From positions 186,001 to 250,000 of IMG/VR virus record IMGVR_UViG_3300032240_001991: a stretch of DNA of 64,000 nucleotides; one strand, written 5' to 3'. The stretch's first letter is position 1. Every line of letters starts with the position of its first letter. Both the position numbers and the translations under genes were made by a program. This document shows positions 7,480 through 59,139 of this stretch, piece by piece. The notes beneath the pieces were generated by a model, which saw only the letters and a program-made list of their open reading frames with translations, was not told the origin of the DNA and did no database searches.

Positions 7480-7489
7480 GTTTTATTTT

Positions 7490-7563
7490 GCCGGATTGGT
7501 ATAATGGTATTACAGCGGTCTCCAAAACCGTTAACGGGGGTTCAATTCCCTCATCCGGTGCCA
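7490..7563 (+). tRNA. tRNA-Trp(CCA)
   Basis: Loop CT-CCA-AA, G73-CCA. Confidence 0.93.
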
Positions 7564-7583
7564 GACTTAAAAATAAATAATTT

Positions 7584-8288
7584 GTGAATAACATAATTTC
7601 AGAAGGACTAGAATATAACACCAATATTGGATTAAATTATTCTTTCTTATACATGGAAGTTCCTAAGGTATGTTGCACAGTAATTAAAAGAACCCTTCAA
7701 AAAATAGAAGGTTGCGAAAAAGATATAAGCGAAATCCCAATAAAAAGTATGACGACATTAAAAGGAATAAGCAATTCTGGAATGTCTTTTCATGATATAT
7801 TTCATTCTAAAAAATTATTTAAATTTACATTTATCAGGAATCCTTATACACGAATTTTATCTTGCTACCTTGATAAAATTCAATCAAAAAACATTGTGCC
7901 TGATTCGCAACAATATCACGAATATTACGATGCTTTAAATTTAGATTTTAATAAAGAAATTTCTTTTAAAGAATTTTTACTAGCTCTTAAAAAAGACGAA
8001 AATTTAACTAAAAATACGCATTGGACTCCGCAGTTTCTTTTAATTAAAGATTCTAGAATTTCCTATGATTTTATAGGTAGATTTGAAAATTTTGAAAATG
8101 ATTTTAAATTTGTATTAGAACAGATTGGAAAGCCAGACGCAATTATAGCAAATCATTTTCCTGAAAAAATTAGGACTAATGCTAACTTCAGGATAAAAGA
8201 ATTCTACGGAGAGACAGAAAAAGCCTTAGTTTCTGAACTTTACGAATGTGATTTTCGTAGATACAATTATTCAATAGACAGTATTTAA
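7584..8288 (+). CDS. Carbohydrate sulfotransferase (family 2)
   Basis: PAPS-binding-like VPKVCCT, FTFIRNPYTRILSCY, HWTPQ, YDFIGRFENFEND motifs. Confidence 0.85.
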   Translation: MNNIISEGLEYNTNIGLNYSFLYMEVPKVCCTVIKRTLQKIEGCEKDISEIPIKSMTTLKGISNSGMSFHDIFHSKKLFKFTFIRNPYTRILSCYLDKIQSKNIVPDSQQYHEYYDALNLDFNKEISFKEFLLALKKDENLTKNTHWTPQFLLIKDSRISYDFIGRFENFENDFKFVLEQIGKPDAIIANHFPEKIRTNANFRIKEFYGETEKALVSELYECDFRRYNYSIDSI

Positions 8289-8295
8289 AAAGTAC

Positions 8296-8324
8296 TTGAC
8301 TTTTGCATGGTAAAAGAATATAAT
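8296..8324 (+). promoter_or_regulatory. Sigma70-type promoter
   Basis: TTGACT-N17-TATAAT upstream of tRNA-Gln. Confidence 0.75.
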
Positions 8325-8335
8325 AAGTTAACAAT

Positions 8336-8409
8336 TGAGGGTTCGTCTAAAGGTAGGACCGCGGTCTTTGAAGCCGCTTATCGTGGTTCGAATCCACGAC
8401 CCTCAACCA
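8336..8409 (+). tRNA. tRNA-Gln(UUG)
   Basis: U1-A72, loop CT-TTG-AA, CCA. Confidence 0.92.
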
Positions 8410-8432
8410 AATTATTAAATAAATATGTTCAC

Positions 8433-8506
8433 GGGGATGTAAGCTAACGGGAAACTGGCGCGTTTGCATCGCGCACTTGAGGGTTCGATTCCCTCCATCT
8501 CCACCA
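8433..8506 (+). tRNA. tRNA-Ala(UGC)
   Basis: G3:U70 pair, loop TT-TGC-AT, CCA. Confidence 0.93.
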
Positions 8507-8515
8507 ATCAATTGT

Positions 8516-8589
8516 TGCGCGGTAGTAGAACGGCACTACGCTGGGCTCATAATCCGGAGAACTTGGTTCAACTCCAAGCTGCGCTACCA
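8516..8589 (+). tRNA. tRNA-Met(CAU), probably initiator
   Basis: Unpaired U1/U72, GGG run in the anticodon stem, loop CT-CAT-AA. Confidence 0.85.
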
Positions 8590-8597
8590 TTTTAATA

Positions 8598-9512
8598 ATG
8601 AAAATACTTTATACTAGACATATAGATACTAATCAAGAAAAACGAATGCAACAGGACTATCTTTGTGATGTTGTTATTCACGGCTTACGGAGTTTAGGAG
8701 AAGAAGTTATAGATGTACCAAGACTTTGGTACATGTATAAAAATGAGTTTGGTTCTGGAAAGAATAACCTAAACGATCTCTATGGAAGGGGGTTTACTAT
8801 TTTTGCAACCCTAGACGAAGATTTAATAGATCGCACAGATATAGAATTAAAAATTCGTAATCGATATTTTGATCTTATTGTTATTGCTAGAATAGATTAC
8901 GGAACACCTTATCTATCTTTAATTTTAGAAAATTATCCGCCATCAAAAATTATAATACTTGATGGACAGGATTCTGAAAAAATTTACTCTACGTATCTAA
9001 CAACTTGCGGAACTTACTTCAAAAGAGAATTAAGGTTTTCTGATCCGCATATTTTTCCAATTTCTTTTGCTTTTCCTAAAGAAAAAATTCAACAGGTAAA
9101 TTATAATAAATCTAAAATAATTTCTCAAATTAAACCAAACTATAATAGATCTTATCTATTTGATAACGAAAAAGATTATTATAATGAGTATAACGAATCT
9201 CTATTTGCTTATACACAATGTAAAGTAGGTTGGGACGTCATGAGACATTACGAAATCATGGCTTGTAGATCTATTCCTATATTTTATGGTATAGATGTCT
9301 GTCCAGAATATACTTGTACTACATTGCCAAAAAAAGAGTTGTTAGAAATTTTAAATAAACACCTTCAAGATGGGTTTGATTGGTTTACCCAAAATCTAAG
9401 TTACTGTTACGAAATGGAAGAAAAGATACATCAACATTTCTTAAAACATTGCACTACAGAAGTATTAGCAAAATATATCTTAGATACTCATTTTAGTAGA
9501 GTTAAATTATGA
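8598..9512 (+). CDS. Putative glycosyltransferase-like protein (paralog 1)
   Basis: GWDVMRHYEIMACRSIPIF C-terminal motif resembles CgeB/exostosin-like GT folds; strongly similar to the next ORF. Confidence 0.5.
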   Translation: MKILYTRHIDTNQEKRMQQDYLCDVVIHGLRSLGEEVIDVPRLWYMYKNEFGSGKNNLNDLYGRGFTIFATLDEDLIDRTDIELKIRNRYFDLIVIARIDYGTPYLSLILENYPPSKIIILDGQDSEKIYSTYLTTCGTYFKRELRFSDPHIFPISFAFPKEKIQQVNYNKSKIISQIKPNYNRSYLFDNEKDYYNEYNESLFAYTQCKVGWDVMRHYEIMACRSIPIFYGIDVCPEYTCTTLPKKELLEILNKHLQDGFDWFTQNLSYCYEMEEKIHQHFLKHCTTEVLAKYILDTHFSRVKL

Positions 9513-10408
9513 AGATTTTAATTACACGAAACTGGGTTGATCGATACCAAGATTACCTTTCAGATTCAATATTTCATGGGCTTAAAAGTCTAGGTGAAGA
9601 AGTTGTAGATGTACCGCAACTATGGTACATGTATAAAGATGAGTTTACTTCTGGAAAGCGTAGTTTAGTTAACGACGTATATGGCAGAGGATTTACTTTG
9701 TATTCCTCAATAGATTCTGACAATGTTGATCGAACAGACATAGAACATAAAATACGATCTAGCTACTTTGATATCATCATCTGTTCAAGAGCTGAGTTGC
9801 CAGGACCTTATTATTATCAAATGCTAGAGTCATATCCGCACAATAAAATTATAGTTTTAGATGGTACTGATGAAACTCATCTTTGTGATCAAAATCTTTT
9901 AGGGAAAGCAACATATTTTAAAAGAGAAAATGTTCATCCTTATAATAGATCTGTACATCCTATTTCTTTTTCTTTCCCAAAAGAAAAAATTCAAAAACCT
10001 AATTTTAATAAATCAAAAATGATGGCTGCTCCTGATCCTAGAGCAGCTTCTTCTTTTTCTTTTTTTAAAGAAGAAGATTATTACAATGAATATAATAAAT
10101 CTTGCTTTGGAGTAACAATAAAAAAAGGCGGATGGGACTGTATGCGACATTACGAAATTATGGGTTCGAGAGCCATACCTTTATTTTTAGATATAGATCA
10201 TTGCCCTAATAGTATTCTAACTACGTTACCTAAAAAAGAATTATTTGACATTTTAACTGTATGCCGAGAGAAAGGCGGCGATTGGATTAAAGAAAACATG
10301 GATTATTATTATGAAATGGAAGAAAAGATACATCAACATTTCTTAAAACACTGTACTACAGAAGAATCGGCAAAATATATGTTAGATATTCATCTTAAAA
10401 ATCGTTGA
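9509..10408 (+). CDS. Putative glycosyltransferase-like protein (paralog 2)
   Basis: GGWDCMRHYEIMGSRAIPLF; shares YEMEEKIHQHFLKHCTTE with paralog 1. Confidence 0.5.
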   Translation: MKILITRNWVDRYQDYLSDSIFHGLKSLGEEVVDVPQLWYMYKDEFTSGKRSLVNDVYGRGFTLYSSIDSDNVDRTDIEHKIRSSYFDIIICSRAELPGPYYYQMLESYPHNKIIVLDGTDETHLCDQNLLGKATYFKRENVHPYNRSVHPISFSFPKEKIQKPNFNKSKMMAAPDPRAASSFSFFKEEDYYNEYNKSCFGVTIKKGGWDCMRHYEIMGSRAIPLFLDIDHCPNSILTTLPKKELFDILTVCREKGGDWIKENMDYYYEMEEKIHQHFLKHCTTEESAKYMLDIHLKNR

Positions 10409-10432
10409 CATTTTTTTATATGAATATATAAT
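10405..10432 (+). promoter_or_regulatory. Sigma70-type promoter
   Basis: TTGACA-N16-TATAAT upstream of tRNA-Ser. Confidence 0.65.
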
Positions 10433-10450
10433 TGTTAAATAAATTGTTAA

Positions 10451-10539
10451 GGAAGGTTGGCTGAGCGGTTAAAGCAGCAGGTTGCTAACCTGCCGTCCCT
10501 AATAGGGGCGCATAGGTTCGAATCCTATACCTTCCGCCA
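10451..10539 (+). tRNA. tRNA-Ser(GCU)
   Basis: Loop TT-GCT-AA, long V arm, G73-CCA. Confidence 0.94.
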
Positions 10540-10559
10540 TATTTTTTAAAGGAAACTTT

Positions 10560-10745
10560 GTGTACAAACCAACAGCAAGTTATAAAATGTCTTCAGAATC
10601 TAAGCGTCTTCTTTCAAAGATTCAGGACCCGCATGAGAGGGGAGAAACGAAGCGTTTGATTATTCAAGCGGATATGCATTATCAATCTCGTTCTCGAGTT
10701 CGTAGCGGACGAGAAATTAAGTCTGGTGAGACCGACACAGAGTAA
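10560..10745 (+). CDS. Small basic hypothetical protein
   Basis: GTG start after AAGGAA; fills the gap between two tRNAs. Confidence 0.55.
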   Translation: MYKPTASYKMSSESKRLLSKIQDPHERGETKRLIIQADMHYQSRSRVRSGREIKSGETDTE

Positions 10746-10757
10746 ATAAAGATATAT

Positions 10758-10833
10758 GCCCACTTAGCACAGCTGGTAGTGCAACTGATTTGTAATCAGT
10801 AGGTCGGGAGTTCGAATCTCTCAGTGGGCACCA
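10758..10833 (+). tRNA. tRNA-Thr(UGU)
   Basis: Loop TT-TGT-AA, CCA. Confidence 0.95.
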
Positions 10834-10836
10834 ATC

Positions 10837-10963
10837 GCGACGGCTCCAATGTCGTTAATATTGGCGCATTCTTGGATGCGAGAAAAGTCCTTAGAATTTA
10901 AGATTACTTTGTCCTAATTGCCATAGTCAAACAGAAAATTTTGGCAGTAAAGGTCAAGGTAAT
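10837..10963 (+). ncRNA. Candidate structured RNA (H-type pseudoknot plus two hairpins)
   Basis: GCGAC/GTCGT and CCAAT/ATTGG interleaved; CGCAT/ATGCG hairpin; long hairpin ATTACTTTG/CAAGGTAAT with inner CCT/AGG and TTGCCA/TGGCAG. Confidence 0.45.
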
Positions 10964-11011
10964 AGATATAAAAAATTTACAAAGAGAAATAGTTATTTGC
11001 AAAAATACAAA

Positions 11012-11085
11012 GCCTCGTTAGTTTAATGGTAAAACTCTGCTTTTACACGGCAGCTACGGCAGTTCAATTCTGTCACGAGGTACCA
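11012..11085 (+). tRNA. tRNA-Val(UAC)
   Basis: Loop TT-TAC-AC, A73-CCA. Confidence 0.9.
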
Positions 11086-11090
11086 AGATT

Positions 11091-11167
11091 CGGGAAGTAG
11101 CTCAGCTTGGTAGAGCACCTGCTTTGGGAGCAGGGTGTCGCAGGTTCGAATCCTGTCTTCCCGACCA
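11091..11167 (+). tRNA. tRNA-Pro(UGG)
   Basis: C1-G72, loop TT-TGG-GA, CCA. Confidence 0.95.
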
Positions 11168-11183
11168 ATTATAAGGAAACAAT

Positions 11184-11876
11184 ATGTCGTTAGAAAGATT
11201 ACCCGGAGTAAGTTATGTGTGGCACGAAAGAGACATCTTTACTGTAGTTTACAATAATGGACAATGGGGTAACGGAGTTACCCTGCCTAAAAGCGGAATT
11301 GGATCTACCCTTTGGTATACTGAAAATCTCCGTAAAGAATTACCAAATTTATTAGAAAAATATAATTTAAAAAGAATATACGATGCACCATGTGGTGATA
11401 TGACATGGATGCCCCTAGTATTAGAATCTACTCATTATGAGCAATACATAGGAGCAGATATTGTATCAACACTTATCCAAGATATGAGAGATAAGTTTGA
11501 CAACGATAAATGGTCATTTAGAGTTAATAATATCTGCAATGATCGTTTTCCGGACGCAGATGTTTGGTTTTGTAGAGATTGTTTGTTTCACTTAACTAAC
11601 GAGAATATTCTTAAGGCCCTCAAAAATTTTGTTAATTCTTCTATTCCTTACATACTAACAACTTCACATTGTTTTGATACCGTTGGACCAGATAACGTAG
11701 TATTTCAGGAAAATCAAGACGGATTAAACGGCGATTACAGATTGTTAAATCTAACAGCTAGCCCGTGGAATTTTTCAGAACCGTTAGCTAAAATAGACGA
11801 TACGTATGAAGGGTTTTCTAAAAGATACATGGGTCTTTGGACAAGAGAAAGTGTTGCTAAAGCTCTAAATCTATAA
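11184..11876 (+). CDS. Class I SAM-dependent methyltransferase
   Basis: IYDAPCGD motif I, YIGADIV, DVWFCRDCLFHL. Confidence 0.8.
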   Translation: MSLERLPGVSYVWHERDIFTVVYNNGQWGNGVTLPKSGIGSTLWYTENLRKELPNLLEKYNLKRIYDAPCGDMTWMPLVLESTHYEQYIGADIVSTLIQDMRDKFDNDKWSFRVNNICNDRFPDADVWFCRDCLFHLTNENILKALKNFVNSSIPYILTTSHCFDTVGPDNVVFQENQDGLNGDYRLLNLTASPWNFSEPLAKIDDTYEGFSKRYMGLWTRESVAKALNL

Positions 11877-11922
11877 TAAATACTTTAGTGTTAAGTTAAC
11901 ACAAATAAAAAGGAGATTTACA

Positions 11923-12129
11923 ATGGAAACTCTAAAAGGTGCGGTAAAGTCAAAAACAGTTTGGTTAGGTGTATTAGTAGCTGCTCTTTCAGCTCTTCAG
12001 TCTGGACTAAATGGAGTAGGTATTACTCCTGAACAACTAGGTGTTGTTGGCCCGCTTCTAGGTGTTGTAATTGTTTGGTTACGTTCTATAACAACTGGGT
12101 CTTTAGCTGATAAGAACACATCTAAATAA
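11923..12129 (+). CDS. Small two-TM membrane protein (holin-like)
   Basis: KSKTVW start, two hydrophobic helices, basic tail; strong AAGGAG RBS. Confidence 0.5.
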   Translation: METLKGAVKSKTVWLGVLVAALSALQSGLNGVGITPEQLGVVGPLLGVVIVWLRSITTGSLADKNTSK

Positions 12130-12147
12130 TTTGAGTTTACTGCTATT

Positions 12148-12183
12148 AAAGGGTTAGATCGCAAGGTCTAACCCTTTATTTGT
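12148..12183 (+). terminator. Rho-independent terminator
   Basis: AAAGGGTTAGATC-GCAA-GGTCTAACCCTTT followed by T-rich sequence. Confidence 0.8.
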
Positions 12184-12188
12184 TTATT

Positions 12189-12264
12189 GCCCCTGTAACT
12201 TAACGGATAGAGTGCTTGGCTTCGAACCAAGAAGTTGTGGGTTCAAATCCTGCCAGGGGCGCCA
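12189..12264 (+). tRNA. tRNA-Arg(UCG)
   Basis: Loop CT-TCG-AA, CCA. Confidence 0.88.
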
Positions 12265-12274
12265 TAAATACAAG

Positions 12275-12733
12275 ATGCGTATTACAGAAATACTAGAAGG
12301 TAAATTTGATTATTCAGTAAAGGATTATGAAAACGTACCTTTTGATCCTACAGATTCGTCTGGTCGACTAAGTGTGGGAATTAGTTCAAAAAATCCTAAC
12401 TTAGGACCTCACGAAGGCAAGATACTAAACTTAATGCTTAAAGGTATGAAGCCTGCTGCTGTTATTACACAAAAAGAATTAAATCAATATTTTGCTCCTT
12501 ACATACATGCAAAGAAAATTGTTCTAATTGGTCCTTTTCCTATTACTAGAGGAACACAAACAGACTTTATTGTAACTCTGCCTGGAGAGGAATGGAGAGG
12601 CCGCAAATTATCAAAGATTTGGCCAAAATTACACGCTGCTACTGATCCTAAAGAAATTAAATTGATACATGCTAAAATTGGAAAACTCTTAGGCTATCCA
12701 AAAGAATCAATCAGACATTTCATTGATAAATAA
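12275..12733 (+). CDS. Hypothetical protein (MRITEILE N-terminus, possible internal head protein)
   Basis: ORF-track start lies inside tRNA-Arg; ATG 12275 is the likely start. Confidence 0.6.
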   Translation: MRITEILEGKFDYSVKDYENVPFDPTDSSGRLSVGISSKNPNLGPHEGKILNLMLKGMKPAAVITQKELNQYFAPYIHAKKIVLIGPFPITRGTQTDFIVTLPGEEWRGRKLSKIWPKLHAATDPKEIKLIHAKIGKLLGYPKESIRHFIDK

Positions 12734-12855
12734 TCTCGCCATCCAACCTTTCGGTATAGGACAAGTAGTATGACTACGGCGTATGCAGGGATCTAGAGAC
12801 AGTGCGCACTGTTCTACGATTGACGAACCGAACCAACACTTTTAAGGAGACCTAA

Positions 12856-13215
12856 ATGGCTGTTTACTGGGGATATCATTTGATGCTGGATTGCTCGGGT
12901 TGCAACGATAATATAAAAGATCGTGAGCAAATTTATCGTTTTACCAAAGAATTAGTTAAGCGCATCGACATGACTGCTTTTGGCGAACCAATTATTGAAT
13001 TTTTGCTTCCTGGTGATCCAAAAGAAGGTTACAGCTTAATGCAGCTCATTACCACCAGTAATATTTGTGCACATTTTGTTAACCCTGACAATACTGCCTA
13101 CATCGATATTTTTAGTTGCAAAGATTATAATATAGAAGAAGCCAAGGCTGTAGTCTCTGAATTTTTTGCTCCAACTAAAATGAGAACTAATTACATTACC
13201 CGCAATGCTGATTAA
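12856..13215 (+). CDS. speD: S-adenosylmethionine decarboxylase proenzyme-like (pyruvoyl type)
   Basis: GYHLMLDCSGC, GYSLMQLITTSNICAHF (cleavage-site region), YIDIFSCK. Confidence 0.8.
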   Translation: MAVYWGYHLMLDCSGCNDNIKDREQIYRFTKELVKRIDMTAFGEPIIEFLLPGDPKEGYSLMQLITTSNICAHFVNPDNTAYIDIFSCKDYNIEEAKAVVSEFFAPTKMRTNYITRNAD

Positions 13216-13221
13216 CGTATA

Positions 13222-13299
13222 GCTCCTATCGTCTAGACGGGCCCAGGACTTTCGATTCTCAGTCGGATAACACAGGTTCGAATCCTGTTAGGAGCACCA
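13222..13299 (+). tRNA. tRNA-Glu(CUC)
   Basis: GCTCCTA/TAGGAGC acceptor, loop TT-CTC-AG, CCA. Confidence 0.8.
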
Positions 13300-13306
13300 A
13301 AGATAA

Positions 13307-13936
13307 ATGGAAAACAAGTATATACTGTTTGATATAGGAGCAAATACTGGAACCGATAGCTTGGAAAAAACTAAGCTTAATCCTTATGTTGAAACATATG
13401 CTTTTGAACCAACTCCTTATCTAACCCAATACCTAGCATGGCACAGTAAAGAATTCTCTAATAGATACCATATCATTCCGCACGCTGTTAGTAACTTTGA
13501 CGGAATTTCTAAGTTTAATATTGGAATTGACTGGGGTTGCAGTTCTTTAAATGAAATTAGTGATAACATCAACGAAATATGGCCTGGGTGGCCCGGTGGG
13601 CCAGAATTTCGTACAATAGAAATCATTGACGTTGGAGTAATTAGATTAGATACCTGGTTTAGAAGAAATAATTTAAACATTGATAAAATTGATTTCTTTC
13701 ATTGCGACACGCAAGGCAGTGATTTAAAAGTCCTTCAAGGAATGGGAGATTATATAGAGCTTATTCAAGAAGGAGTAGTAGAGTGTGCTAGAGACGAAAA
13801 TTCTAAATTATATAAAGAAAACCATACTGAACAAGAAATGATTGAATTTTTGTTTTCAAAAGGGTTTGACATTCCTAGAAGAGAATGGAATGACCAATAT
13901 GGTTGCGAAATTAATGTATTCTTTAAAAAACGATAA
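13307..13936 (+). CDS. FkbM-family methyltransferase
   Basis: FDIGANTG, YAFEPTP, IRLD, HCDTQGSDLKVLQG. Confidence 0.88.
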   Translation: MENKYILFDIGANTGTDSLEKTKLNPYVETYAFEPTPYLTQYLAWHSKEFSNRYHIIPHAVSNFDGISKFNIGIDWGCSSLNEISDNINEIWPGWPGGPEFRTIEIIDVGVIRLDTWFRRNNLNIDKIDFFHCDTQGSDLKVLQGMGDYIELIQEGVVECARDENSKLYKENHTEQEMIEFLFSKGFDIPRREWNDQYGCEINVFFKKR

Positions 13937-13940
13937 TTTC

Positions 13941-13969
13941 TTGACATAATAGCAAGTATGATATATACT
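13941..13969 (+). promoter_or_regulatory. Sigma70-type promoter
   Basis: TTGACA-N17-TATACT. Confidence 0.75.
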
Positions 13970-13991
13970 ATATACATTCTAAGGAGTTTAA

Positions 13992-14210
13992 ATGAGTAAG
14001 GGAAGTCGAGCAAGGCCACTATCAGTTTCTCAGGCAGAATTTGATAAGAACTGGGAAGAAATTTTTGGAGGAATGGGTTCTTGCCCTTGCGGCCGTAGCC
14101 CAATTAAACAGTGTGTAGGGTGGCACAATCTTAACGAAGAACAACTGGCTAGAGCAAAAGAAAACTGGGATAAAAGAGAAAAGTTACGTAATGACAAGAG
14201 TTGTAGTTAA
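13992..14210 (+). CDS. Small protein with CDGSH-like Fe-S/Zn motif
   Basis: CPCGRSPIKQCVGWH has the spacing of the CDGSH 3Cys-1His site. Confidence 0.55.
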   Translation: MSKGSRARPLSVSQAEFDKNWEEIFGGMGSCPCGRSPIKQCVGWHNLNEEQLARAKENWDKREKLRNDKSCS

Positions 14211-14592
14211 CGGTTGCTTTGACGTATTACACCTAGGACACCTTAATCTTTTAGCATATGCTAGAGGAATTACTAATTCTTACGTGATGGTACTTATAGA
14301 TAGTGATCGGAGAGTTAAAGAACTTAAAGGATCATCTCGTCCTATTAATCCTCAAGGAGAACGTGCTTTGATGTTATCTGCTCTCAGATATGTTGATCAA
14401 GTTCGTATATTTGATAGTGACGAAGAATTAGCAGATATGATCAAACAATTTGCTCCAGATATAATGGTCAAAGGCAGTGACTATAAAAATAAACCTATCA
14501 TAGGTTCAGAATACTGCAAGGAAATAAAATTTTATGAGTACCTCAATGGATATTCAACAACAGAAAAAATACAGAGTATTATTAATAGGTGA
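14191..14592 (+). CDS. rfaE2: Heptose-phosphate adenylyltransferase (HldE/RfaE domain II) cytidylyltransferase family
   Basis: NGCFDVLHLGH (HxGH), DRRVKELKGSSRPI, VKGSDY, GYSTT. Confidence 0.88.
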   Translation: MTRVVVNGCFDVLHLGHLNLLAYARGITNSYVMVLIDSDRRVKELKGSSRPINPQGERALMLSALRYVDQVRIFDSDEELADMIKQFAPDIMVKGSDYKNKPIIGSEYCKEIKFYEYLNGYSTTEKIQSIINR

Positions 14593-15340
14593 TAGCTGTA
14601 TTGATGTTTATCGATACGGTACTGTAGATAGAATCAGTCCTGAGGCTCCTGTTCCTGTTTTTAAATTTAAAAATATGGAAACAAGACAAGGAATGGCAGC
14701 AAATGTTCAAAAAAATTTAGAAGCATTTGGAATTGACGTCACTTCTTACTTTGGCACAGATTCTACTAAAACCAGAATAGTAGATCTCAAAAGTAAACAA
14801 CATATTCTAAGAATTGACGACGATGTCTCTTCTGACCCTTTAATCTTTGGAGATATAAAAGACCGATTAAAGACCTTTGATGCAATAGTGATCAGCGACT
14901 ACGATAAAGGTTGGGTAAGTTATGAATTGGTTGAAAATATTAGTAGAACTTACCAAGGTCCAATTTTTATCGATACAAAGAAAAGAGATTTATCTAGATT
15001 CGGCCAATGCTACGTTAAGGTTAACGAATTAGAATATAACAACAGATATTCTGTAAACGAAACTCTAATTATTACTTTAGGGGAGCGTGGGGCTGTTTAT
15101 CGAACTTATAATCAAGATGATGGTAAAAAAGAAAAATGGTTCCCTACGGAAAAAGTAGAAGTAGTAGATGTTTGCGGCGCAGGGGATACATTTTTGTCCG
15201 CTATGGTTGCAAATTACTTAAATAGTAGTAATATAGAAGATGCAATCATTTTTGCTAATCGTGCTAGCGGAATTGCAGTACAACATAGCGGAGTGTATGT
15301 ATTAACTGAGGAAGACATTAAAAATATTGAGCGGGTATGA
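14534..15340 (+). CDS. rfaE1: Heptose-phosphate kinase (HldE/RfaE domain I), PfkB family
   Basis: IGDSCID.Y.YG.V.RISPEAPVPV, ISDYDKG, DVCGAGDTF, AN.A.GIAV. Confidence 0.88.
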   Translation: MSTSMDIQQQKKYRVLLIGDSCIDVYRYGTVDRISPEAPVPVFKFKNMETRQGMAANVQKNLEAFGIDVTSYFGTDSTKTRIVDLKSKQHILRIDDDVSSDPLIFGDIKDRLKTFDAIVISDYDKGWVSYELVENISRTYQGPIFIDTKKRDLSRFGQCYVKVNELEYNNRYSVNETLIITLGERGAVYRTYNQDDGKKEKWFPTEKVEVVDVCGAGDTFLSAMVANYLNSSNIEDAIIFANRASGIAVQHSGVYVLTEEDIKNIERV

Positions 15341-15404
15341 TGTAGTGGTAGCCTGCAACCTTGCCAAGGTCGACGTACGAGTTCGATTCTCGTTACCCGC
15401 TCCA
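15331..15404 (+). tRNA. tRNA-Gly(GCC), overlapping the last 10 nt of rfaE1
   Basis: GCGGGTA/TACCCGC acceptor, loop TT-GCC-AA, U73-CCA. Confidence 0.88.
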
Positions 15405-25430: not shown

Positions 25431-25961
25431 ATGTATACTAGTACTAAGTTTTTTAAAGAAATTGGACCTTGCGCTTATCGCAATTGGAAGTCAGATACAG
25501 ACTGTTATATGCTTCACGGCTACGATCGTAGCTTTCGATTTGTATTTGGAGCATCTCACCTAGATAAGCAAGGGTTTGTTGTAGATTTTGGTGGCCTAAA
25601 AGCCATCAAGCGTCAACTGGAAGATTGGTTTGATCACACAGTAATCTTACAGGCTGACGATCCTTTGGTTCATACATTCAGACATTTAACCAAGTTAGGC
25701 CACTGCAAACTTCAGACGTTTCCGTTGATTAGTTGCGAAGGGTTGTCTGAGTATGTAGGAGAATACGTAGATCACATGCTTTACGAAGCCAATGGGGGTC
25801 GTAATTGGGTCATTAGCTGTGAAATGATTGAAGCTGAAAAGAATAGTGCTATCTACACTATACAGCATGACAATCCAGATCGCATGCGTTGGCACGATCT
25901 ACAGGCTTTCAACAAAGAGATGGAAGAAGAAGCTGGTAAGATTGAATTTAAGGATCTATGA
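25431..25961 (+). CDS. queD: 6-carboxy-tetrahydropterin synthase (QueD/PTPS family)
   Basis: CAYR..C..LHGYD (QueD-type CxxxHG), [25 protein letters not shown]. Confidence 0.85.
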
Positions 25962-48749: not shown

Positions 48750-49199
48750 ATGGAAAAACTAGTTAACGCAGCAAAAATAGGACTCGCTAGCTCTTTTAGT
48801 TTCTATCTAAAGGCGCAGCACTTTCACTGGAACGTTGAGGGTCCAGACTTTTTAGAATATCACGATTTGTTTGGTAAAATTTACGACGAAGTTTATGGTA
48901 GCATTGATTCATATGCCGAAAAAATTCGAGCATTGGGTGGGTACGCTCCGTCTAGCTTAAGTGAATTTGCCAAAATAACACAAATTGAAGATCAGTTAGA
49001 AGTATTACCTAAAGAACAAATGGTACTAGTTCTGCTAGAAGATAATAGAAAAATGCTAAAGATATTTAAAATAGTTTATGATTTTGCTGAAGCTGAAGGT
49101 GAACATGGGTTTAGCAACTTTTTAGCAGAACGAATGGATGCACATCGCAAGCACGGATGGATGTTATCTGCTAGCATGAAAGGCCAAGGGCAGCTATGA
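48750..49199 (+). CDS. dps: Dps ferritin-like DNA-protection protein
   Basis: FYLKAQHFHWNVEGPDF..YH.LF, D..AEKIRALG, H.KH.WML.A. Confidence 0.93.
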   Translation: MEKLVNAAKIGLASSFSFYLKAQHFHWNVEGPDFLEYHDLFGKIYDEVYGSIDSYAEKIRALGGYAPSSLSEFAKITQIEDQLEVLPKEQMVLVLLEDNRKMLKIFKIVYDFAEAEGEHGFSNFLAERMDAHRKHGWMLSASMKGQGQL

Positions 49200-50502: not shown

Positions 50503-50772
50503 ATGAGTAAAGTATTTGGTGATCCAGAAAAGGCAAAGATTCGTCAAATCGTTTCCGAAGGTGTAACTGTAATGCAAGAAATTACAGATTTGACCGAAGG
50601 TCTTAACGATACAATCAAAGCTGTAGCCGAAGAATTGGAAGTTAAGCCTGGTGTTATTAAGAAAGCAATTCGTATTGCTCTTAAGGACCAGTGGGATCAG
50701 GTATTCCGTGAGTTTGATGATCTAGAAACAATCGTTGATATCAGCGGCCATGCTAATCGCAGGGAAGACTAA
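50503..50772 (+). CDS. Small helical DNA-binding protein (T4 DsbA/GapR-like)
   Basis: Size, helical pattern IKAVAEELEVKPGVIKKAIRIA and position before the polymerase. Confidence 0.5.
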   Translation: MSKVFGDPEKAKIRQIVSEGVTVMQEITDLTEGLNDTIKAVAEELEVKPGVIKKAIRIALKDQWDQVFREFDDLETIVDISGHANRRED

Positions 50773-50790
50773 GGACCTCCTTAGTCTTTC
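50766..50790 (+). terminator. Terminator hairpin
   Basis: AGACTAAGG-ACCT-CCTTAGTCT followed by TTC. Confidence 0.65.
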
Positions 50791-50806
50791 TATAAATAAT
50801 AAAAAT

Positions 50807-50861
50807 AAGGTTAGACCAGCCATAAATGGTCATGTAAAGGTTAGTGAGCCACAAATCACTA
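50807..50861 (+). promoter_or_regulatory. Tandem hairpin operator in the DNA polymerase leader
   Basis: AAGGTTA-GACCA-GCCATAAA-TGGTC and AAGGT-TAGTGA-GCCACAAA-TCACTA; the second abuts the AGGAG RBS. Confidence 0.65.
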
Positions 50862-50871
50862 GGAGACGAGT

Positions 50872-53559
50872 ATGAGTTACGTTGATGCCATCTGGGATCG
50901 CGACGACGATGTTATTAGAGTCGTTGAAAGAGATCCAAAAAAAGGTCGTATATTCCACGACTATCCCGCAAAATATATTTTTTATTACCCTGACCAAAAG
51001 GGCAAGTATAGAAGTATTTTCAGTGAAACCCTTACAAAGGTAACTTCTAAAAGTTTTAAAGAACATCAAAAAGAACAAAGAATACACAGCGGTCATCGAC
51101 TCTACGAAAGCGATATCAATCCTATATTTCGTTGTCTAGAAGAAAACTATCTTGGCCAAGATTCGCCCAAATTAAACGTAGCATTTTTTGACATCGAAGT
51201 GGACTTTGATCCAGAAAGAGGATATGCAAGTCCAGATGATGCGTTTATGCCTATTACTGCTATTGCGGTACATTTACAGTGGCTTGATACTCTAGTATGT
51301 TTGGCTATTCCTCCAAAATCTCTTTCTATGAGTCAGGCACAGGAATTAGTTAAAGATATACCTAATACAGTACTGTTTGAAACAGAGCACGAACTGTTAG
51401 ATACGTTTCTTAATCTAATTGAAGATGCAGATGTTCTAAGCGGCTGGAACAGTGAAGGTTTTGACGTTCCTTATACTGTTAATCGAGTTACTAAAGTCCT
51501 TAGCAAAGAAGACACTAAGAGATTTTGTCTTTGGAATCAATTACCAAAAAAGAGAGAATACGAAAAATATGGTAAGCAGGCAGTAACATACGACTTTGTT
51601 GGTCGTGTACATTTGGACAGTCTTGAACTATATCGAAAATATACCTATGAAGAGCGACACAGCTACCGACTTGACGCGATAGGCGAAATGGAGATTGGTG
51701 AAACTAAGACTGTTTATGAAGGTACCCTAGATCAGTTATACAACAGCGATTTTCGTAAATTTGTTGAGTACAACAGACAAGACTGTGCCCTATTGGACAA
51801 GTTAGATAAAAAGTTAAAATTTCTTGACCTAGCTAGTACTATTGCTCACGAAAATACAGTTCTACTTAAAACTGTTATGGGAGCTGTAGCAGTTACTGAG
51901 CAGGCTATTGTAAATGAAGCACATCGTTTAGGTATGATAGTTCCTAGTCGTAAACGCAGAAGCGACAGTGACGATCCTGAAGATGAAAACGACGATAAGG
52001 CAGCAGGTGCATATGTAGCATATCCTAAAAAAGGATTGCATGATTGGATTGGTTCGATGGACATTAATAGTCTGTATCCGTCTGTTATTCGTGCACTAAA
52101 CATGGGACCCGAAACTATCATTGGACAATTACGCCCAGACTATACCAAAGCAGAAATTGACAGTAAGATAGCTAAAAAGATGAGCTTTGCAGGTGCATGG
52201 GAAGGTAAGTTTGGCAGTAACGAATATGAAATGGTTATTAACAAAGATCGTGTTCGTGAAATTACTGTTGATTGGGAAGATGGACGCAATGATGTATTGA
52301 GCGGAGCGCAACTGTATGAATTGATTTACGAAAGTAATCATCCATGGATGCTCAGTGCTAACGGTACTATTTTTACCTACGAAAAAGAAGGAATTATTCC
52401 TGGACTTCTAGCTCGATGGTACAAGGAACGCAAAGAGCTACAAAAGAAACTTAAAGAAGCAATTGACGCAGGTAATAAAACTGATGAAGAATATTGGGAT
52501 AAGCGGCAGCTAGTTAAGAAAATTAATCTAAACAGCTTGTACGGTGCTATTCTTAACGCTGGTTGTAGATTCTTTGACAATCGAATTGGACAATCAACTA
52601 CGCTAACTGGGCGTCGTATTGCTAAACATATGGCTAGTAAAATTAACGAAATTATTACTGGGGAATACAACCATTTAGGTAAAGCAATTATTTACGGCGA
52701 TACTGACAGTGCATACTTCAGTGCTTACACTACGTTAAAGAACGAAATTGAAAAAGGTCTTATCCCTTGGGACAAAGAAACAGTAATTCAACTTTATAAT
52801 ACTGTAGCAGAAGAAGTTAATAGTACATTTCCTCAAATGATGTTAGATGAATTTCATTGTCCAAAGAAGAGAGGGGATGTTATTCGCGCAGGACGAGAGA
52901 TTGTAGCCAGTAAAGGCTTGTTTATTACTAAAAAGCGTTATGCGGTGTTGTATTACGACAAAGAAAACAAGCGACAAGATATTAACGGCAAGCCCGGTAA
53001 GATCAAGGCAATGGGTCTAGATCTAAAACGCAGCGATACTCCAGAATTTATGCAGGACTTCTTAAGTGAAATTCTAAATAGCGTACTAACTGGTTCTCAA
53101 GAAAAAGAAATTCTTGATCGTATTACAGAATTTCGTACTGAGTTTAAGTCTCGAGCAGGATGGGAAAAGGGTACACCTAAGCGTGTTAACAATCTTACAG
53201 AATATCAAGCTAAGGAAGAAAAGCAAGGTAAAGCTAATATGCCCGGACATGTTCGTGCGTCAATTAATTGGAATACATTACGTCGTATGAATGGCGACAA
53301 ATATTCTATGCAAATTGTAGACGGAATGAAAGTAATTGTTTGCAAAGTAAAAGATAATCCGTTAGGGTTTACTAGTGTTGCCTACCCAACAGACGAGTTA
53401 CGACTTCCCAAATGGTTTCAAGATTTGCCATTTGATCACGACGAAATGGAAGCTGTTATTATTAACAATAAGGTAGAAAATCTTATCGGTGTTCTTGAAT
53501 ATGATCTAGAATCAACAGTTCGAGATACAACATTTAACAAACTATTCAGCTTTGAATAA
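50872..53559 (+). CDS. polB: Family B DNA polymerase (T4 gp43-like)
   Basis: Exo FFDIEVD, GWNSEGFDVPY, YN.QDC; Pol SMDINSLYPS, KINLNSLYG, YGDTDS, KKRY. Confidence 0.97.
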   Translation: MSYVDAIWDRDDDVIRVVERDPKKGRIFHDYPAKYIFYYPDQKGKYRSIFSETLTKVTSKSFKEHQKEQRIHSGHRLYESDINPIFRCLEENYLGQDSPKLNVAFFDIEVDFDPERGYASPDDAFMPITAIAVHLQWLDTLVCLAIPPKSLSMSQAQELVKDIPNTVLFETEHELLDTFLNLIEDADVLSGWNSEGFDVPYTVNRVTKVLSKEDTKRFCLWNQLPKKREYEKYGKQAVTYDFVGRVHLDSLELYRKYTYEERHSYRLDAIGEMEIGETKTVYEGTLDQLYNSDFRKFVEYNRQDCALLDKLDKKLKFLDLASTIAHENTVLLKTVMGAVAVTEQAIVNEAHRLGMIVPSRKRRSDSDDPEDENDDKAAGAYVAYPKKGLHDWIGSMDINSLYPSVIRALNMGPETIIGQLRPDYTKAEIDSKIAKKMSFAGAWEGKFGSNEYEMVINKDRVREITVDWEDGRNDVLSGAQLYELIYESNHPWMLSANGTIFTYEKEGIIPGLLARWYKERKELQKKLKEAIDAGNKTDEEYWDKRQLVKKINLNSLYGAILNAGCRFFDNRIGQSTTLTGRRIAKHMASKINEIITGEYNHLGKAIIYGDTDSAYFSAYTTLKNEIEKGLIPWDKETVIQLYNTVAEEVNSTFPQMMLDEFHCPKKRGDVIRAGREIVASKGLFITKKRYAVLYYDKENKRQDINGKPGKIKAMGLDLKRSDTPEFMQDFLSEILNSVLTGSQEKEILDRITEFRTEFKSRAGWEKGTPKRVNNLTEYQAKEEKQGKANMPGHVRASINWNTLRRMNGDKYSMQIVDGMKVIVCKVKDNPLGFTSVAYPTDELRLPKWFQDLPFDHDEMEAVIINNKVENLIGVLEYDLESTVRDTTFNKLFSFE

Positions 53560-53567
53560 AAATTTAT

Positions 53568-53596
53568 TTGACTATTTGTATTTTTCTAAATATAAT
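53568..53596 (+). promoter_or_regulatory. Sigma70-type promoter
   Basis: TTGACT-N17-TATAAT. Confidence 0.7.
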
Positions 53597-53614: not shown

Positions 53615-54349
53615 ATGAAAGAAATTCTCAAAGACATTGTAAGTCATACGTATAACCTAGGCTTTCTCAATATTGTTAAGGTTACCGGCGAAGAAACATC
53701 AACTAAAATTGACTCTATGAGTGATGACCGTTCAGTTATTATGTACGGCGAAACCGCTAACCCATATCCAGATATGATTGGTGTATTTGGCATGCCGCAA
53801 CTTAACAAACTTAAGTATCTAGTTGAAGGTAATGAATACAAGGAAGATGCGACTATTGATATTGTTAAAGCAGAAATTAATGGCGTAACTGTTCCAGTTG
53901 GTATTCACTTTGAAAATGCAAGCGGTGACTTTAAAAACGATTATCGTTTTATGAATACTGCAATCATTAACGAAAAACTTAAGACTGTAAAATTCCGTGG
54001 TGCAAGTTGGGATGTTGAAGTTACTCCAAGCCTACAGGCTGTACAGAGATTTGGGTTCCAAGCTGGTGCTAACAGCGAACATACTACCTTCCTTGTTAAG
54101 ACTGAAGGCGGAAACCTAAAGTTTATCTTTGGCGATCAAAGTACTCACGGTGGTGAATTTGTGTTTGCTACTAATGTTACTGGCAAGCTAACTCGTTCAC
54201 ATACTTGGCCAGTTGCTTCTATTCTCAGCATTTTAAAAATTGCTGATGTTAACAACTGCAAATTGAGTATTAGCGATGCTGGTGCATTGCAGATTACTAT
54301 GGATAGCGGATTAGCCACATACAAGTATATTATTCCAGCGCAGGCTTAA
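53615..54349 (+). CDS. DNA sliding clamp (gp45/PCNA-like)
   Basis: Size about 245 aa, position after the polymerase, C-terminal ..G.LQI..DSGLATYKYIIPA. Confidence 0.65.
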   Translation: MKEILKDIVSHTYNLGFLNIVKVTGEETSTKIDSMSDDRSVIMYGETANPYPDMIGVFGMPQLNKLKYLVEGNEYKEDATIDIVKAEINGVTVPVGIHFENASGDFKNDYRFMNTAIINEKLKTVKFRGASWDVEVTPSLQAVQRFGFQAGANSEHTTFLVKTEGGNLKFIFGDQSTHGGEFVFATNVTGKLTRSHTWPVASILSILKIADVNNCKLSISDAGALQITMDSGLATYKYIIPAQA

Positions 54350-58296: not shown

Positions 58297-59139
58297 ATGA
58301 ATGATAAAACTTGGACACTCCCTGTAGAAGAAGATCCCGCTACTGGAGACAGCATTATCATCTTCCCACCTGATCTTCTTGAGGAAACCGGATGGAAAGA
58401 AGGAGATACATTAAACTGGATCGAAAATAACGACGGATCATTTACACTACAAAGGAAAGACATGAAACCAATAAGTTCTCAAATTAGAGAAAGATTAGAA
58501 CAAGCTAAACATCGTTATCACAGCAATGATAACATTTCTGCTTTTATAAACGACGGCGAACTTGAACAACTGCAAGAAGAAGTTGCTCTTAAATTAGAAG
58601 ATGTACTACAAAGTCTTGTAATTGATACAGTTCACGATCACAATACACAAGATACTGCAAATCGAGTAGCTAAGATGTTTATTAAGGAAACATTTAGCGG
58701 GCGTTACCGTCCAGTTCCTAAGGTTACAGCATTTCCTAACATGGGCTATAAGAGTCTTTATACTACAGGTCCAATTAGTATTCGTAGCACCTGTGCTCAT
58801 CACTTTCAAAATATTGTAGGACGTTGTTGGGTAGGCATTGTTCCTGAAGGCGAAGTAATTGGTCTTAGTAAGTTTAATCGAATCGTTCATCATATTTGCG
58901 AACGTCCGCAGATTCAAGAAGAGATGACTACGCAGATTGCAGAGGCACTTAAGGAATACGCTAAAACTGAGCATATCGCCGTTGTAGTCAAAGCAGAGCA
59001 TCATTGTATGACCATGCGCGGTGTACGTGAGCACGAAAGTGATATGACTACTGCAATTATGCTGGGCGCATTTAGTACAGATCCTGCACTAAAGCAAGAA
59101 TTCTATGATATTTGTCTTTCAATGAAGGGTCATCGGTAA
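58297..59139 (+). CDS. folE: GTP cyclohydrolase I with in-frame N-terminal AbrB/MazE-like domain
   Basis: TANRVAKMF, IRSTCAHHF, IGLSKFNRIV, RPQIQEEMT, AEHHCMTMRGV; N-terminal IIIFPPDLLEETGWKEGDTLNW. Likely start ATG 58297 (GGAG), internal ATG 58462 (AAGGA). Confidence 0.93.
   Translation: MNDKTWTLPVEEDPATGDSIIIFPPDLLEETGWKEGDTLNWIENNDGSFTLQRKDMKPISSQIRERLEQAKHRYHSNDNISAFINDGELEQLQEEVALKLEDVLQSLVIDTVHDHNTQDTANRVAKMFIKETFSGRYRPVPKVTAFPNMGYKSLYTTGPISIRSTCAHHFQNIVGRCWVGIVPEGEVIGLSKFNRIVHHICERPQIQEEMTTQIAEALKEYAKTEHIAVVVKAEHHCMTMRGVREHESDMTTAIMLGAFSTDPALKQEFYDICLSMKGHR

What the first reader, a model, noticed from the sequence alone, without database searches (positions are those of the whole stretch)
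50807..50874. Tandem covarying hairpins with a conserved GCCAYAAA loop at the DNA polymerase RBS
Seen: two copies 30 nt apart keep AAGGTTAG upstream and an 8-nt loop GCCA(T/C)AAA, while their stems differ yet stay paired (GACCA/TGGTC vs TAGTGA/TCACTA), which is internal covariation. The second stem ends on the first A of the AGGAG RBS. Established: T4/RB69 gp43 represses its own translation by binding a hairpin operator beside its RBS. Inference: a doubled autogenous operator, or a tandem mini-aptamer for a (modified) deoxynucleotide that couples polymerase synthesis to dNTP or deazaguanine supply.
Basis: partly seen in the sequence, partly recalled or inferred. Interest (0 to 1): 0.62.

Follow-up and report, generated by a model that had tools for sequence, protein, structure and literature searches.

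The report
Tandem pseudoknot leader of phage polymerase
The short untranslated leader in front of a giant phage's DNA polymerase gene folds into two near-identical miniature RNA pseudoknots. Hundreds of uncultivated relatives keep them, always glued to that gene, which makes this a new, well-supported regulatory RNA that most likely lets a protein (probably the polymerase itself) throttle its own synthesis.

Summary
Window 50807-50865 holds two tandem hairpins, each with a 5-bp stem and an 8-nt loop (GCCAUAAA, GCCACAAA). The second hairpin abuts the AGGAG ribosome-binding site of an 895-aa gp43-type family-B DNA polymerase.

- **Conservation:** more than 100 distinct leaders from uncultivated jumbo-phage contigs (polB 52-81% identical) keep both hairpins. 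All ten stem pairs show compensatory changes: 94% of cells are paired and 0 of 500 shuffles reach that.
- **New structural point:** the GGU upstream of each hairpin pairs with the loop's GCC, so each unit is a ~24-nt H-type pseudoknot. All three GCU loops have an AGY partner; none of the 194 other loops does.
- **Specificity:** the element occurs once per genome, only before polB. It is absent from 185,579 prokaryote species genomes and from Rfam.
- **Function:** not shown. The best reading is a translational operator for a phage protein, probably the polymerase, working like the T4/RB69 gene 43 operator but with a different architecture.
- **Rivals:** a self-sufficient stabiliser or enhancer, another RNA-binding protein, or (unlikely) a tiny tandem riboswitch.

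The parts
50762..50791 (+). Strong terminator-like hairpin (13 bp) spanning the stop codon of the upstream DsbA-like gene. It separates that gene from the polB unit.
   Evidence: -18.6 kcal/mol, z = -5.35, 0 of 200 shuffles fold as well. The simple terminator scan did not call it because the T-run is weak.
50791..50798 (+). TATAAATA, a T4-late-type promoter-like octamer. It predicts an mRNA 5' end a few nt before AAGGU.
   Evidence: 22 copies in the 326-kb record, mostly intergenic and just upstream of genes. Relatives keep a TAAATA-like or TATAAT-like box at the same place. The start site is inferred, not shown.
50807..50865 (+). The whole conserved leader element: two tandem mini-pseudoknot units plus the Shine-Dalgarno sequence.
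   Evidence: Covariance model R1 hits here at 73.7 bits, E 3e-16, and it is the only strong hit in the genome.
50809..50811 (+). GGU, the 5' strand of pseudoknot helix S1 of unit 1. It pairs with GCC at 50819-50821.
   Evidence: 97% paired. G-C changes to A-U in L021 and L036, and U-G changes to C-G or U-A in several lineages.
50814..50831 (+). Hairpin 1: stem 50814-50818 / 50827-50831 and loop 50819-50826 (GCCAUAAA).
   Evidence: all 5 pairs show compensatory double changes.
50839..50841 (+). GGU, the 5' strand of pseudoknot helix S1 of unit 2. It pairs with GCC at 50848-50850.
   Evidence: contingency table over 197 units. In L262 the unit-2 loop ACC keeps a GGU partner (U-A).
50843..50860 (+). 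Hairpin 2: core stem 50843-50847 / 50856-50860 and loop 50848-50855 (GCCACAAA). As a plain hairpin it can extend to 50841/50862, which would take in the first two bases of the SD.
50861..50865 (+). Shine-Dalgarno AGGAG, 6 nt before the start codon.
   Evidence: across the 100 leaders, the end of the longest hairpin-2 stem lies -1 to +4 nt from the SD core (GGAG or a near variant) in 92.
50872..53559 (+). polB: a gp43-type family-B DNA polymerase of 895 aa, the regulated gene.
   Evidence: PF00136 3e-37, PF03104 1.5e-17; 26% identity to T4 gp43, E 1e-53.

Best explanation
Shown: the 5' untranslated leader of the polB mRNA folds into two tandem, homologous mini-pseudoknots. Each unit has a 3-bp helix S1 (GGY paired with the loop's GCC), 1-3 linker nt, and a 4-6-bp helix S2 (the visible hairpin stem). 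No nucleotide separates S2's 5' strand from GCC, and a 5-nt A-containing strand (N N A A N) crosses S1. The two loops start a nearly fixed 28-30 nt apart, and unit 2 ends 0-4 nt before the Shine-Dalgarno sequence. Inferred: the element is a translational operator. A phage protein, most probably the DNA polymerase itself when it is in excess over its DNA substrate, binds and stabilises the marginally stable pseudoknots. Unit 1 would be the more constrained, primary site. Unit 2 would be the site whose occupancy sterically blocks 30S access to the adjacent SD. This would limit polymerase synthesis in the way T4 and RB69 gp43 limit theirs.
For: Structure:
- Both stems covary heavily.
- G-U pairs occur on the sense strand only, with almost no A-C, so the structure is RNA of the polB strand.
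- S1 is supported by GCU loops always having an AGY partner (3 of 3, in lineages that are far apart on the polB tree), against 0 of 194 other loops. GGC:GCC and GGU:ACC variants also fit.

Specificity for polB:
- There is one tandem hit per genome in 5 phage records. In a second set of 5 records, two of them 93-99% complete, the only unit hits are those of the polB leader.
- A polB-blind pattern scan of IMG/VR gave 113 of 115 loci directly upstream of polB.
- The scan of prokaryote genomes gave 0 true hits.
- The upstream neighbour varies, yet the motif stays attached to polB.

Regulatory position:
- Unit 2 abuts the SD without sequestering its core.
- Loop-to-loop spacing is held at 28-30 nt in 97 of 100 leaders, although its components vary and compensate (r = -0.89). 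This suggests the two units are read together.

Precedent:
- T4, RB69 and RB49 gp43 repress their own translation through a leader hairpin with a 5-bp stem and 8-nt loop, in which UAA(C/A) loop bases matter (PMC3014915; T4 sequence).
- The polymerase here is of the gp43 type.

Losses:
- The motif is lost exactly where another ORF has been placed within about 12 nt of polB, removing the free leader.
Against: - No binding or expression data exist, and no RNA-seq run holds this phage.
- The loop sequence and register differ from the T4 operator, and T4's hairpin is not a pseudoknot. Homology therefore cannot be invoked, only analogy.
- Every invariant base (GGY, GCC, AA) can be explained by the pseudoknot fold alone, so a trans-acting reader is not strictly required.
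- T4-type polymerases are monomers, so the need for two sites is unexplained.
- Some T4 relatives' polymerases do not autoregulate.
- One leader (L312) has a U-U mismatch in S1.
Confidence: 0.45

Rival explanations
1. A self-sufficient cis element with no dedicated regulator. A compact pseudoknot at the very 5' end protects the polB mRNA from 5'-end-dependent decay. The SD-proximal unit keeps the ribosome-binding site open, or acts as a standby or enhancer platform, which sets a fixed translation level.
For: - All invariant bases are explained by the fold itself.
- A promoter-like TATAAATA sits so that the transcript would begin 2-3 nt before the first GGU, making unit 1 a 5'-terminal structure.
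- The SD core is left unpaired in nearly all members.
- In the plain-hairpin form the stem can take in the first 1-2 SD bases, and the pseudoknot would free them.
Against: - 5'-end protection needs only a stem, not an invariant S1 sequence, invariant loop adenines, a second copy and a fixed 28-30-nt spacing.
- No other gene in these 330-350-kb genomes uses it, which is odd for a general stability or translation device.
- Unit 1 keeps A4 and Y5 of the loop, which the fold does not obviously require.
Confidence: 0.25
2. An operator for a different RNA-binding protein: a phage-encoded RegA-like or dimeric repressor, or a host protein. It would work like dimeric ThrRS on the two anticodon-arm mimics of the thrS leader, or S15 on the rpsO pseudoknot.
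For: - Two equivalent sites at fixed spacing suit a dimer.
- A pseudoknot next to an SD is the classic S15/rpsO arrangement (PMC3985624, listed).
- A small conserved gene (DsbA-like, 89 aa) lies upstream of polB in 78 of 78 relatives.
Against: - There is only a single target in the whole genome, whereas general repressors such as RegA have many.
- No RegA family member was found in the record (not conclusive).
- The DsbA-like neighbour is annotated as a double-stranded-DNA binder. It is also present next to polB in Phosso, Atu_ph07 and Vibrio phage 2.275.O, which lack the motif.
- A host protein would predict copies in host genomes, and none were found.
Confidence: 0.15
3. A tandem miniature riboswitch. 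Each ~24-nt pseudoknot, or the pair together as in guanidine-II, binds a small molecule such as a dNTP, a nucleotide or a 7-deazaguanine precursor, and tunes polB translation.
For: - S1 has only 3 bp, so it is the kind of helix that ligands stabilise in preQ1-I.
- Tandem small modules next to an SD recall guanidine-II.
- The phage carries FolE and QueD genes.
Against: - No Rfam family matches, even at E<=10.
- There is no joining strand between S1 and S2, and the L1 linker is not conserved, which leaves little for a pocket.
- The two units are unequally constrained.
- The element is restricted to one gene of one phage clade and is absent from 185,579 prokaryote species genomes. Known riboswitch classes, by contrast, span several gene contexts and hosts (background knowledge).
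- No TGT/DpdA was found.
- Pseudoknot formation does not sequester the SD.
Confidence: 0.08
4. A DNA-level element: two direct repeats three helical turns apart serve as binding sites for a transcription factor, or as an origin or primase hairpin.
For: - The repeats are direct, 29-30 bp apart and close to a promoter-like box.
- A DsbA-like DNA-binding protein is encoded next door.
Against: - The stems change freely while pairing is kept, which double-stranded DNA recognition does not require.
- G-U pairs are common, whereas the A-C pairs expected on the other strand are nearly absent.
- The upstream GGY covaries with the loop triplet.
Confidence: 0.03

Closest known systems
T4 / RB69 / RB49 gene 43 autogenous translational operator
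   Same: - It sits in the 5' leader of a gp43-type family-B DNA polymerase gene, beside the ribosome-binding site.
- The hairpin unit has a 5-bp stem and an 8-nt loop (18 nt).
- The loop contains a UAA/AA element, which in T4, RB69 and RB49 matters for binding.
   Different: - There are two copies instead of one.
- Each is a pseudoknot, whereas the review states there is no evidence of one for gene 43.
- The loop is GCCAYAAN with the invariant AA at loop positions 6-7, whereas T4's AAUAACUC has UAA at 3-5.
- Unit 2 touches the SD, while T4's hairpin ends 10 nt before its AAGGA.
- There is no sequence similarity, and polymerase binding is untested here.
T4/T2 gene 32 leader pseudoknot (gp32 autoregulation)
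   Same: A small H-type pseudoknot with coaxial helices in the leader of a phage replication gene, used for autogenous translational control.
   Different: The gene 32 system has a single pseudoknot far upstream that nucleates cooperative binding along an unstructured A/U-rich stretch. It belongs to a different gene and protein (the single-strand DNA-binding protein) and has different helix and loop sizes.
E. coli rpsO (S15) and thrS (ThrRS) translational operators
   Same: rpsO has a pseudoknot next to the SD that is stabilised by the gene's own product (PMC3985624). thrS has two similar stem-loops read by a dimer, one of them adjacent to the SD (background knowledge).
   Different: These are host genes with unrelated sequences. 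rpsO switches between a double hairpin and a single pseudoknot, whereas here each hairpin forms its own local pseudoknot.
Guanidine-II (mini-ykkC) and preQ1-I riboswitches
   Same: Guanidine-II has two small tandem hairpins with conserved loops just upstream of an SD. preQ1-I is a very small H-type pseudoknot with an A-rich strand in the minor groove of the first helix.
   Different: - The loops are 8 nt (GCCAYAAN), not ACGR tetraloops.
- The helix sizes are reversed relative to preQ1-I (3 bp then 5 bp).
- There is no joining strand carrying a ligand-pairing base.
- There is no Rfam match.
- The distribution is limited to a single gene of one phage clade.

Membership tests
T4-type gene 43 translational operator | Lies in the 5' leader of a gp43-type family-B DNA polymerase gene, at or overlapping the ribosome-binding site | tested here: met
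T4-type gene 43 translational operator | A single hairpin of about 16-18 nt (5-bp stem, 8-nt loop) and no pseudoknot | tested here: not met
   The unit geometry matches. However, there are two units, and each forms a covariation-supported pseudoknot. The review states no pseudoknot is known for gene 43.
T4-type gene 43 translational operator | Loop with -UAAC- / -UAAA- in the T4/RB69/RB49 register, and sequence relatedness to those operators | tested here: not met
   The T4 loop is AAUAACUC, against GCCAYAAN here. Only an AA/UAA element is shared, and in a different register.
T4-type gene 43 translational operator | Specific binding by the cognate polymerase and repression of its translation | not testable with these tools
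   No RNA-protein prediction tool and no expression data were available.
H-type RNA pseudoknot | Two helices in the order a-b-a'-b', with covariation in both and loop lengths compatible with coaxial stacking | tested here: met
   S2: all 5 pairs show double changes. S1: G-C to A-U three times, U-G to C-G or U-A, and one violation. L1 is 1-3 nt, L2 is 0 nt and L3 is 5 nt.
Known riboswitch / cis-regulatory RNA families (Rfam 15, including preQ1-I/II/III, guanidine-II, fluoride) | A match to the family covariance model | tested here: not met
   No non-tRNA family reaches its gathering score in the window. There is no match at E<=10 in 50700-50950.
Guanidine-II (mini-ykkC) | Two hairpins, each capped by a conserved ACGR tetraloop | tested here: not met
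   The loops are 8-9 nt of the form GCC-N-N-A-A-N.
Riboswitch (general) | The same aptamer is used in several gene contexts and lineages, with conserved unpaired pocket nucleotides | tested here: not met
   polB is the only context. The motif is absent from prokaryote genomes. The conserved bases are accounted for by S1 and the two L3 adenines.

The most novel reading that the evidence does not exclude
The two ~24-nt pseudoknots together form the smallest natural tandem riboswitch yet seen. It would be encoded only by a clade of jumbo phages, would sense a nucleotide-pool or 7-deazaguanine-pathway metabolite, and would couple DNA polymerase synthesis to precursor supply.
Probability: 0.08. Interest if true: 0.9.

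Novelty: new variant of a known kind. Interest (0 to 1): 0.6.

Why it matters
Autogenous translational control of a replicative DNA polymerase is known only from T4-like phages, where it gave rise to the first SELEX experiment, and no structure of that RNA-protein complex exists.

This finding is an independent, architecturally different leader RNA on a distant gp43-type polymerase. It comes with more than 100 natural sequence variants that already map which bases may vary.

- **If the polymerase binds it:** this gives a second, richly sampled system for asking how a B-family polymerase recognises RNA. It is also a compact protein-responsive translational switch.
- **If nothing binds it:** it is a minimal, modular pseudoknot used as an mRNA 5' cap or translation element.

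Either way it is a new, strongly supported RNA family that is missing from Rfam, and it marks a large clade of uncultivated ~330-350-kb phages.

Tried and rejected
- **Single-sequence statistics:** octamer counts and the fold z-score in the window are not significant on their own.
- **Rfam:** only tRNAs at gathering thresholds, and nothing at E<=10 around the site.
- **Nucleotide similarity to 50,697 phage records:** none. The cultured relatives by protein (Phosso, Atu_ph07, Vibrio 2.275.O, 121Q; 43-51% polB identity) lack the motif.
- **Other copies in the genome:** none. A permissive regex scan, the tandem model and the unit model find only the polB leader.
  - The look-alike hairpin at G000:8714 lies inside a minus-strand 480-aa ORF.
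  - G000:144710 is a bare GCCG[GCCATAAA]CGGC hairpin without GGU (E 0.085).
  - The weak hit in G002 (E 0.46) has no motif.
- **Prokaryote genomes:** 117 pattern hits. None has both stems (two passes at slightly different cut-offs), so they look like chance matches.
- **RegA (PF01818):** not found, but the control also rang nowhere, so this says little.
- **TGT/DpdA:** not found. QueC gave only a sub-threshold hit.
- **Expression data:** no RNA run holds this phage, so read laying was not used and the transcription start stays inferred.
- **Literature:** Petrov and Karam 2002 (PMC137073) is not held, so the T4 review was used instead. Three further full-text searches found no description of this motif.
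- **Alternative pairing:** pairing of the hairpin-1 loop with the downstream GGU was considered and set aside, because AGY:GCU covaries with the upstream triplet while the downstream GGU stays unchanged.
- **Complex prediction:** not used, because it does not take RNA.
- **Correction:** The correct position is 50791-50798.
Full report
**What is there.** The window is G000:C1:186001-250000 of a 326,658-bp IMG/VR virus record.

At 50872-53559 it encodes an 895-aa family-B DNA polymerase:
- Pfam matches are PF00136 and PF03104.
- It is 26% identical to T4 gp43 over 724 residues, E 1e-53.
- It is 43-51% identical to the polymerases of the jumbo phages Phosso, Atu_ph07, Vibrio phage 2.275.O and the 121Q/Rak2 group.

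Upstream, an 89-aa gene (50503-50772) ends inside a very stable 13-bp hairpin at 50762-50791 (-18.6 kcal/mol, z -5.35). Then comes TATAAATA at 50791-50798, and then the finding:
- AAGGU, 2 nt, GACCA, the loop GCCAUAAA, UGGUC.
- A 5-nt spacer.
- AAGGU, 1 nt, AGUGA, the loop GCCACAAA, UCACU.
- AGGAG, 6 nt, AUG.

RNAfold returns exactly these two hairpins.

**Is it more than chance?** From this sequence alone, barely. The fold z-score is -2.06 and neither octamer is significantly enriched in the window.

The comparative evidence settles it:
- A protein-anchored search of IMG/VR returned 80 contigs with polB 72-81% identical. Every one has the two hairpins in front of polB, with different stem sequences.
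- On a MAFFT alignment of 56 distinct leaders, 92.4% of cells are paired against 73.9% in shuffles (0 of 500 reach it). All ten stem pairs have double compensatory changes, and RNAalifold predicts the same helices.
- On 100 leaders (99 distinct rows) aligned by a covariance model, 94.1% are paired, again 0 of 500. Sliding the partner by one to three columns drops pairing to 21-46%.
- G-U pairs are frequent, while the A-C combinations that would mark a structure on the other strand are nearly absent.

The structure therefore belongs to the sense-strand RNA, not to duplex DNA.

**A pseudoknot, not just a hairpin.** The conserved GGU a few nucleotides upstream of each stem is complementary to the first three loop bases, GCC.

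In 197 units taken from polB-anchored (hence unbiased) leaders, the pairs of loop triplet and upstream triplet are:

| Loop triplet | Upstream triplet | Count | Loci |
|---|---|---|---|
| GCC | GGU | 179 | |
| GCC | GGC | 12 | |
| GCU | AGU | 2 | L021, L036 |
| GCU | AGC | 1 | L237 |
| ACC | GGU | 2 | L031, L262 |
| UCC | GGU | 1 | L312, the only mismatch |

- An A at the first upstream position occurs in 3 of 3 GCU loops and in 0 of 194 others.
- L021, L036 and L237 lie in different parts of the polB tree.
- In L021 and L036 the GGU that follows hairpin 1 is unchanged, so the partner is the upstream triplet.
- The count tool gives 95-97% pairing for this helix on alignments that were not fitted to it.

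The strand order is GGY, then 1-3 nt, then the stem's 5' strand, then 0 nt, then GCC, then N-N-A-A-N, then the stem's 3' strand. That is a textbook H-type pseudoknot of about 24 nt. The two helices can stack, and the two invariant adenines sit on the strand that crosses the minor groove of the 3-bp helix. This last point follows from general pseudoknot geometry and was not tested.

The two units differ in loop constraint:
- Unit 1 is almost always GCCA(U/C)AA(A/G/U).
- Unit 2 is GCC-N-N-AA-(A/G), sometimes with a 9-nt loop.

**Anatomy that bears on function.**
- The two loops start 28-30 nt apart in 97 of 100 leaders. Yet the pieces in between vary from 3 to 9 nt and compensate one another (r = -0.89).
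- The end of the longest hairpin-2 stem lies -1 to +4 nt from the SD core in 92 of the 100 leaders. The SD core is almost never inside the conserved pairing.
- As a plain hairpin, unit 2 in the window can extend to 7 bp and take in the first two SD bases. In the pseudoknot form those partners are used elsewhere.
- TATAAATA occurs 22 times in the record, mostly in intergenic DNA just before genes.
- The upstream 89-aa protein is the homologue of phage proteins annotated as DsbA-like double-stranded-DNA-binding proteins. The T4 protein of that name acts in late transcription (background knowledge).
- A T4-late-type start would put the mRNA 5' end 2-3 nt before the first AAGGU. This is inferred, because no RNA-seq run holds this phage.

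**Where else is it?** Nowhere but before polB.
- The tandem model gives one strong hit (E 1e-15 to 1e-19) in each of five phage records, and nothing else below E 0.4.
- In a second set of five records, two of them 93% and 99% complete, the single-unit model finds only the polB-leader units.
- A permissive regex scan of the whole record agrees.
- A DNA pattern that knows nothing about polB hit more than 115 IMG/VR contigs. In 113 of the 115 loci examined, a polB homologue (52-81% identical) starts right after it. The other two have no stems.
- The same pattern in one genome for each of 185,579 bacterial and archaeal species gave 117 hits, none with both stems.
- Rfam 15 has nothing like it, even at E<=10, and four full-text literature searches found no description.

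**Evolution.** On a polB tree of 139 sequences (FastTree):
- A well-supported clade of 122 holds 113 tandem leaders, 4 with a single canonical unit next to the SD, and 5 without.
- Its sister clade of 12 holds 3 single-unit leaders and 9 without.
- Phosso, Vibrio phage 2.275.O, 121Q, T4 and one further contig have none. Atu_ph07, whose polB gene is split, was left out of the tree and also lacks the motif.

Where flanking sequence was examined, the losses inside the clade coincide with an ORF placed within about 12 nt of polB, or overlapping its start.

The DsbA-like gene lies upstream of polB in 78 of 78 relatives with enough flank, sometimes with an extra small gene in between. The motif always stays with polB.

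In one contig (L149) a 53-aa Cys-rich ORF has been inserted between the motif and polB, and it is coupled to polB by an ATGA overlap.

**How it most likely works.** A structure with an invariant 3-bp helix, invariant loop adenines, two copies at fixed spacing and a single target gene per genome, found only in phages, points to a phage-encoded reader.

The one protein guaranteed to accompany the polB leader is the polymerase. T4, RB69 and RB49 gp43 are known to repress their own translation through a leader hairpin of the same 5-bp/8-nt size, whose UAA(C/A) loop bases matter (PMC3014915; T4 sequence).

I therefore rank 'autogenous, or at least protein-mediated, translational operator with SD occlusion from unit 2' first, at 0.45.

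This is analogy, not membership. The T4 loop is AAUAACUC in another register, T4 has one hairpin and no pseudoknot, and it lies 10 nt from the SD.

The rivals are:
- A self-sufficient 5'-terminal stabiliser or translation platform (0.25), because the fold explains all invariant bases.
- Another RNA-binding protein (0.15).
- A miniature tandem riboswitch (0.08).
- A DNA-level site (0.03).

**On the deazaguanine idea.** The record encodes GTP cyclohydrolase I (window about 58600-59112) and a QueD/PTPS-like protein (window about 25470-25859). It has no detectable TGT/DpdA and only a sub-threshold QueC-like hit. Nothing connects these genes to the leader.

**Verdict.** The feature is real, strongly conserved and structurally better defined than first described: tandem mini-pseudoknots. 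It is an undescribed cis-regulatory RNA family specific to the polymerase gene of a large clade of uncultivated jumbo phages. Its function is inferred by position and precedent only.

Noticed in passing
window 3920-15401: A cluster of 20 tRNA genes on the + strand, all well above the Rfam tRNA threshold.
   Followed up: no
window 50503-50772: The 89-aa gene just upstream is a homologue of phage proteins annotated as DsbA-like double-stranded-DNA-binding proteins (PA5oct group, Phosso). It lies upstream of polB in 78 of 78 relatives, and also in three distant phages that lack the RNA motif.
   Followed up: partly
window 50762-50791: A very stable 13-bp hairpin (-18.6 kcal/mol, z -5.35) spans the stop codon of the DsbA-like gene. 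It is terminator-like but has a weak T-run, and its stem contains CCUCCU.
   Followed up: partly
G000 whole record; window 50791-50798: TATAAATA, the T4 late-promoter octamer, occurs 15 times on the + strand and 7 on the - strand. That is fewer than base composition predicts (about 29 per strand), yet most copies are intergenic and just before genes, which suggests T4-like late transcription.
   Followed up: partly
window 53568-53596: A near-consensus sigma-70-type promoter (TTGACT, 17 nt, TATAAT) sits in the 55-nt gap between polB and the next gene. That gene (53615-54349) is 36% identical to Phosso's annotated sliding clamp, so the clamp probably has its own promoter.
   Followed up: partly
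window 48750-49199: A ferritin-like protein (PF00210, E 1.8e-19) is encoded three genes upstream of polB.
   Followed up: no
window ~25470-25859 and ~58600-59112: QueD/PTPS-like and GTP cyclohydrolase I (FolE) genes are present. No TGT/DpdA was found in the record, and only a sub-threshold QueC-like hit at G000:95497-95748. This is a partial 7-deazaguanine precursor pathway.
   Followed up: partly
L149:930-1091: In one relative a 53-aa Cys-rich ORF sits between the leader motif and polB. Its stop overlaps the polB start (ATGA), so the leader there controls the small ORF first.
   Followed up: partly
L324-L326, L329, L237, L242 (polB leaders): A subfamily has only one canonical unit next to the SD, preceded by a different hairpin flanked by GAGUCG and CAUG. 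In L237 and L242 its loop starts with ACU and an AGU lies upstream, so it may be a diverged pseudoknot of the same type.
   Followed up: partly
G000 (whole record): CheckV completeness is given as 36% for this 326,658-bp record. Relatives of 331-353 kb are rated 93-99% complete, so the estimate for this record looks unreliable.
   Followed up: no
G000:C1:144710-144725 (outside the window): A lone hairpin GCCG[GCCATAAA]CGGC with the same loop but no upstream GGU (unit model E 0.085). It is probably chance.
   Followed up: partly
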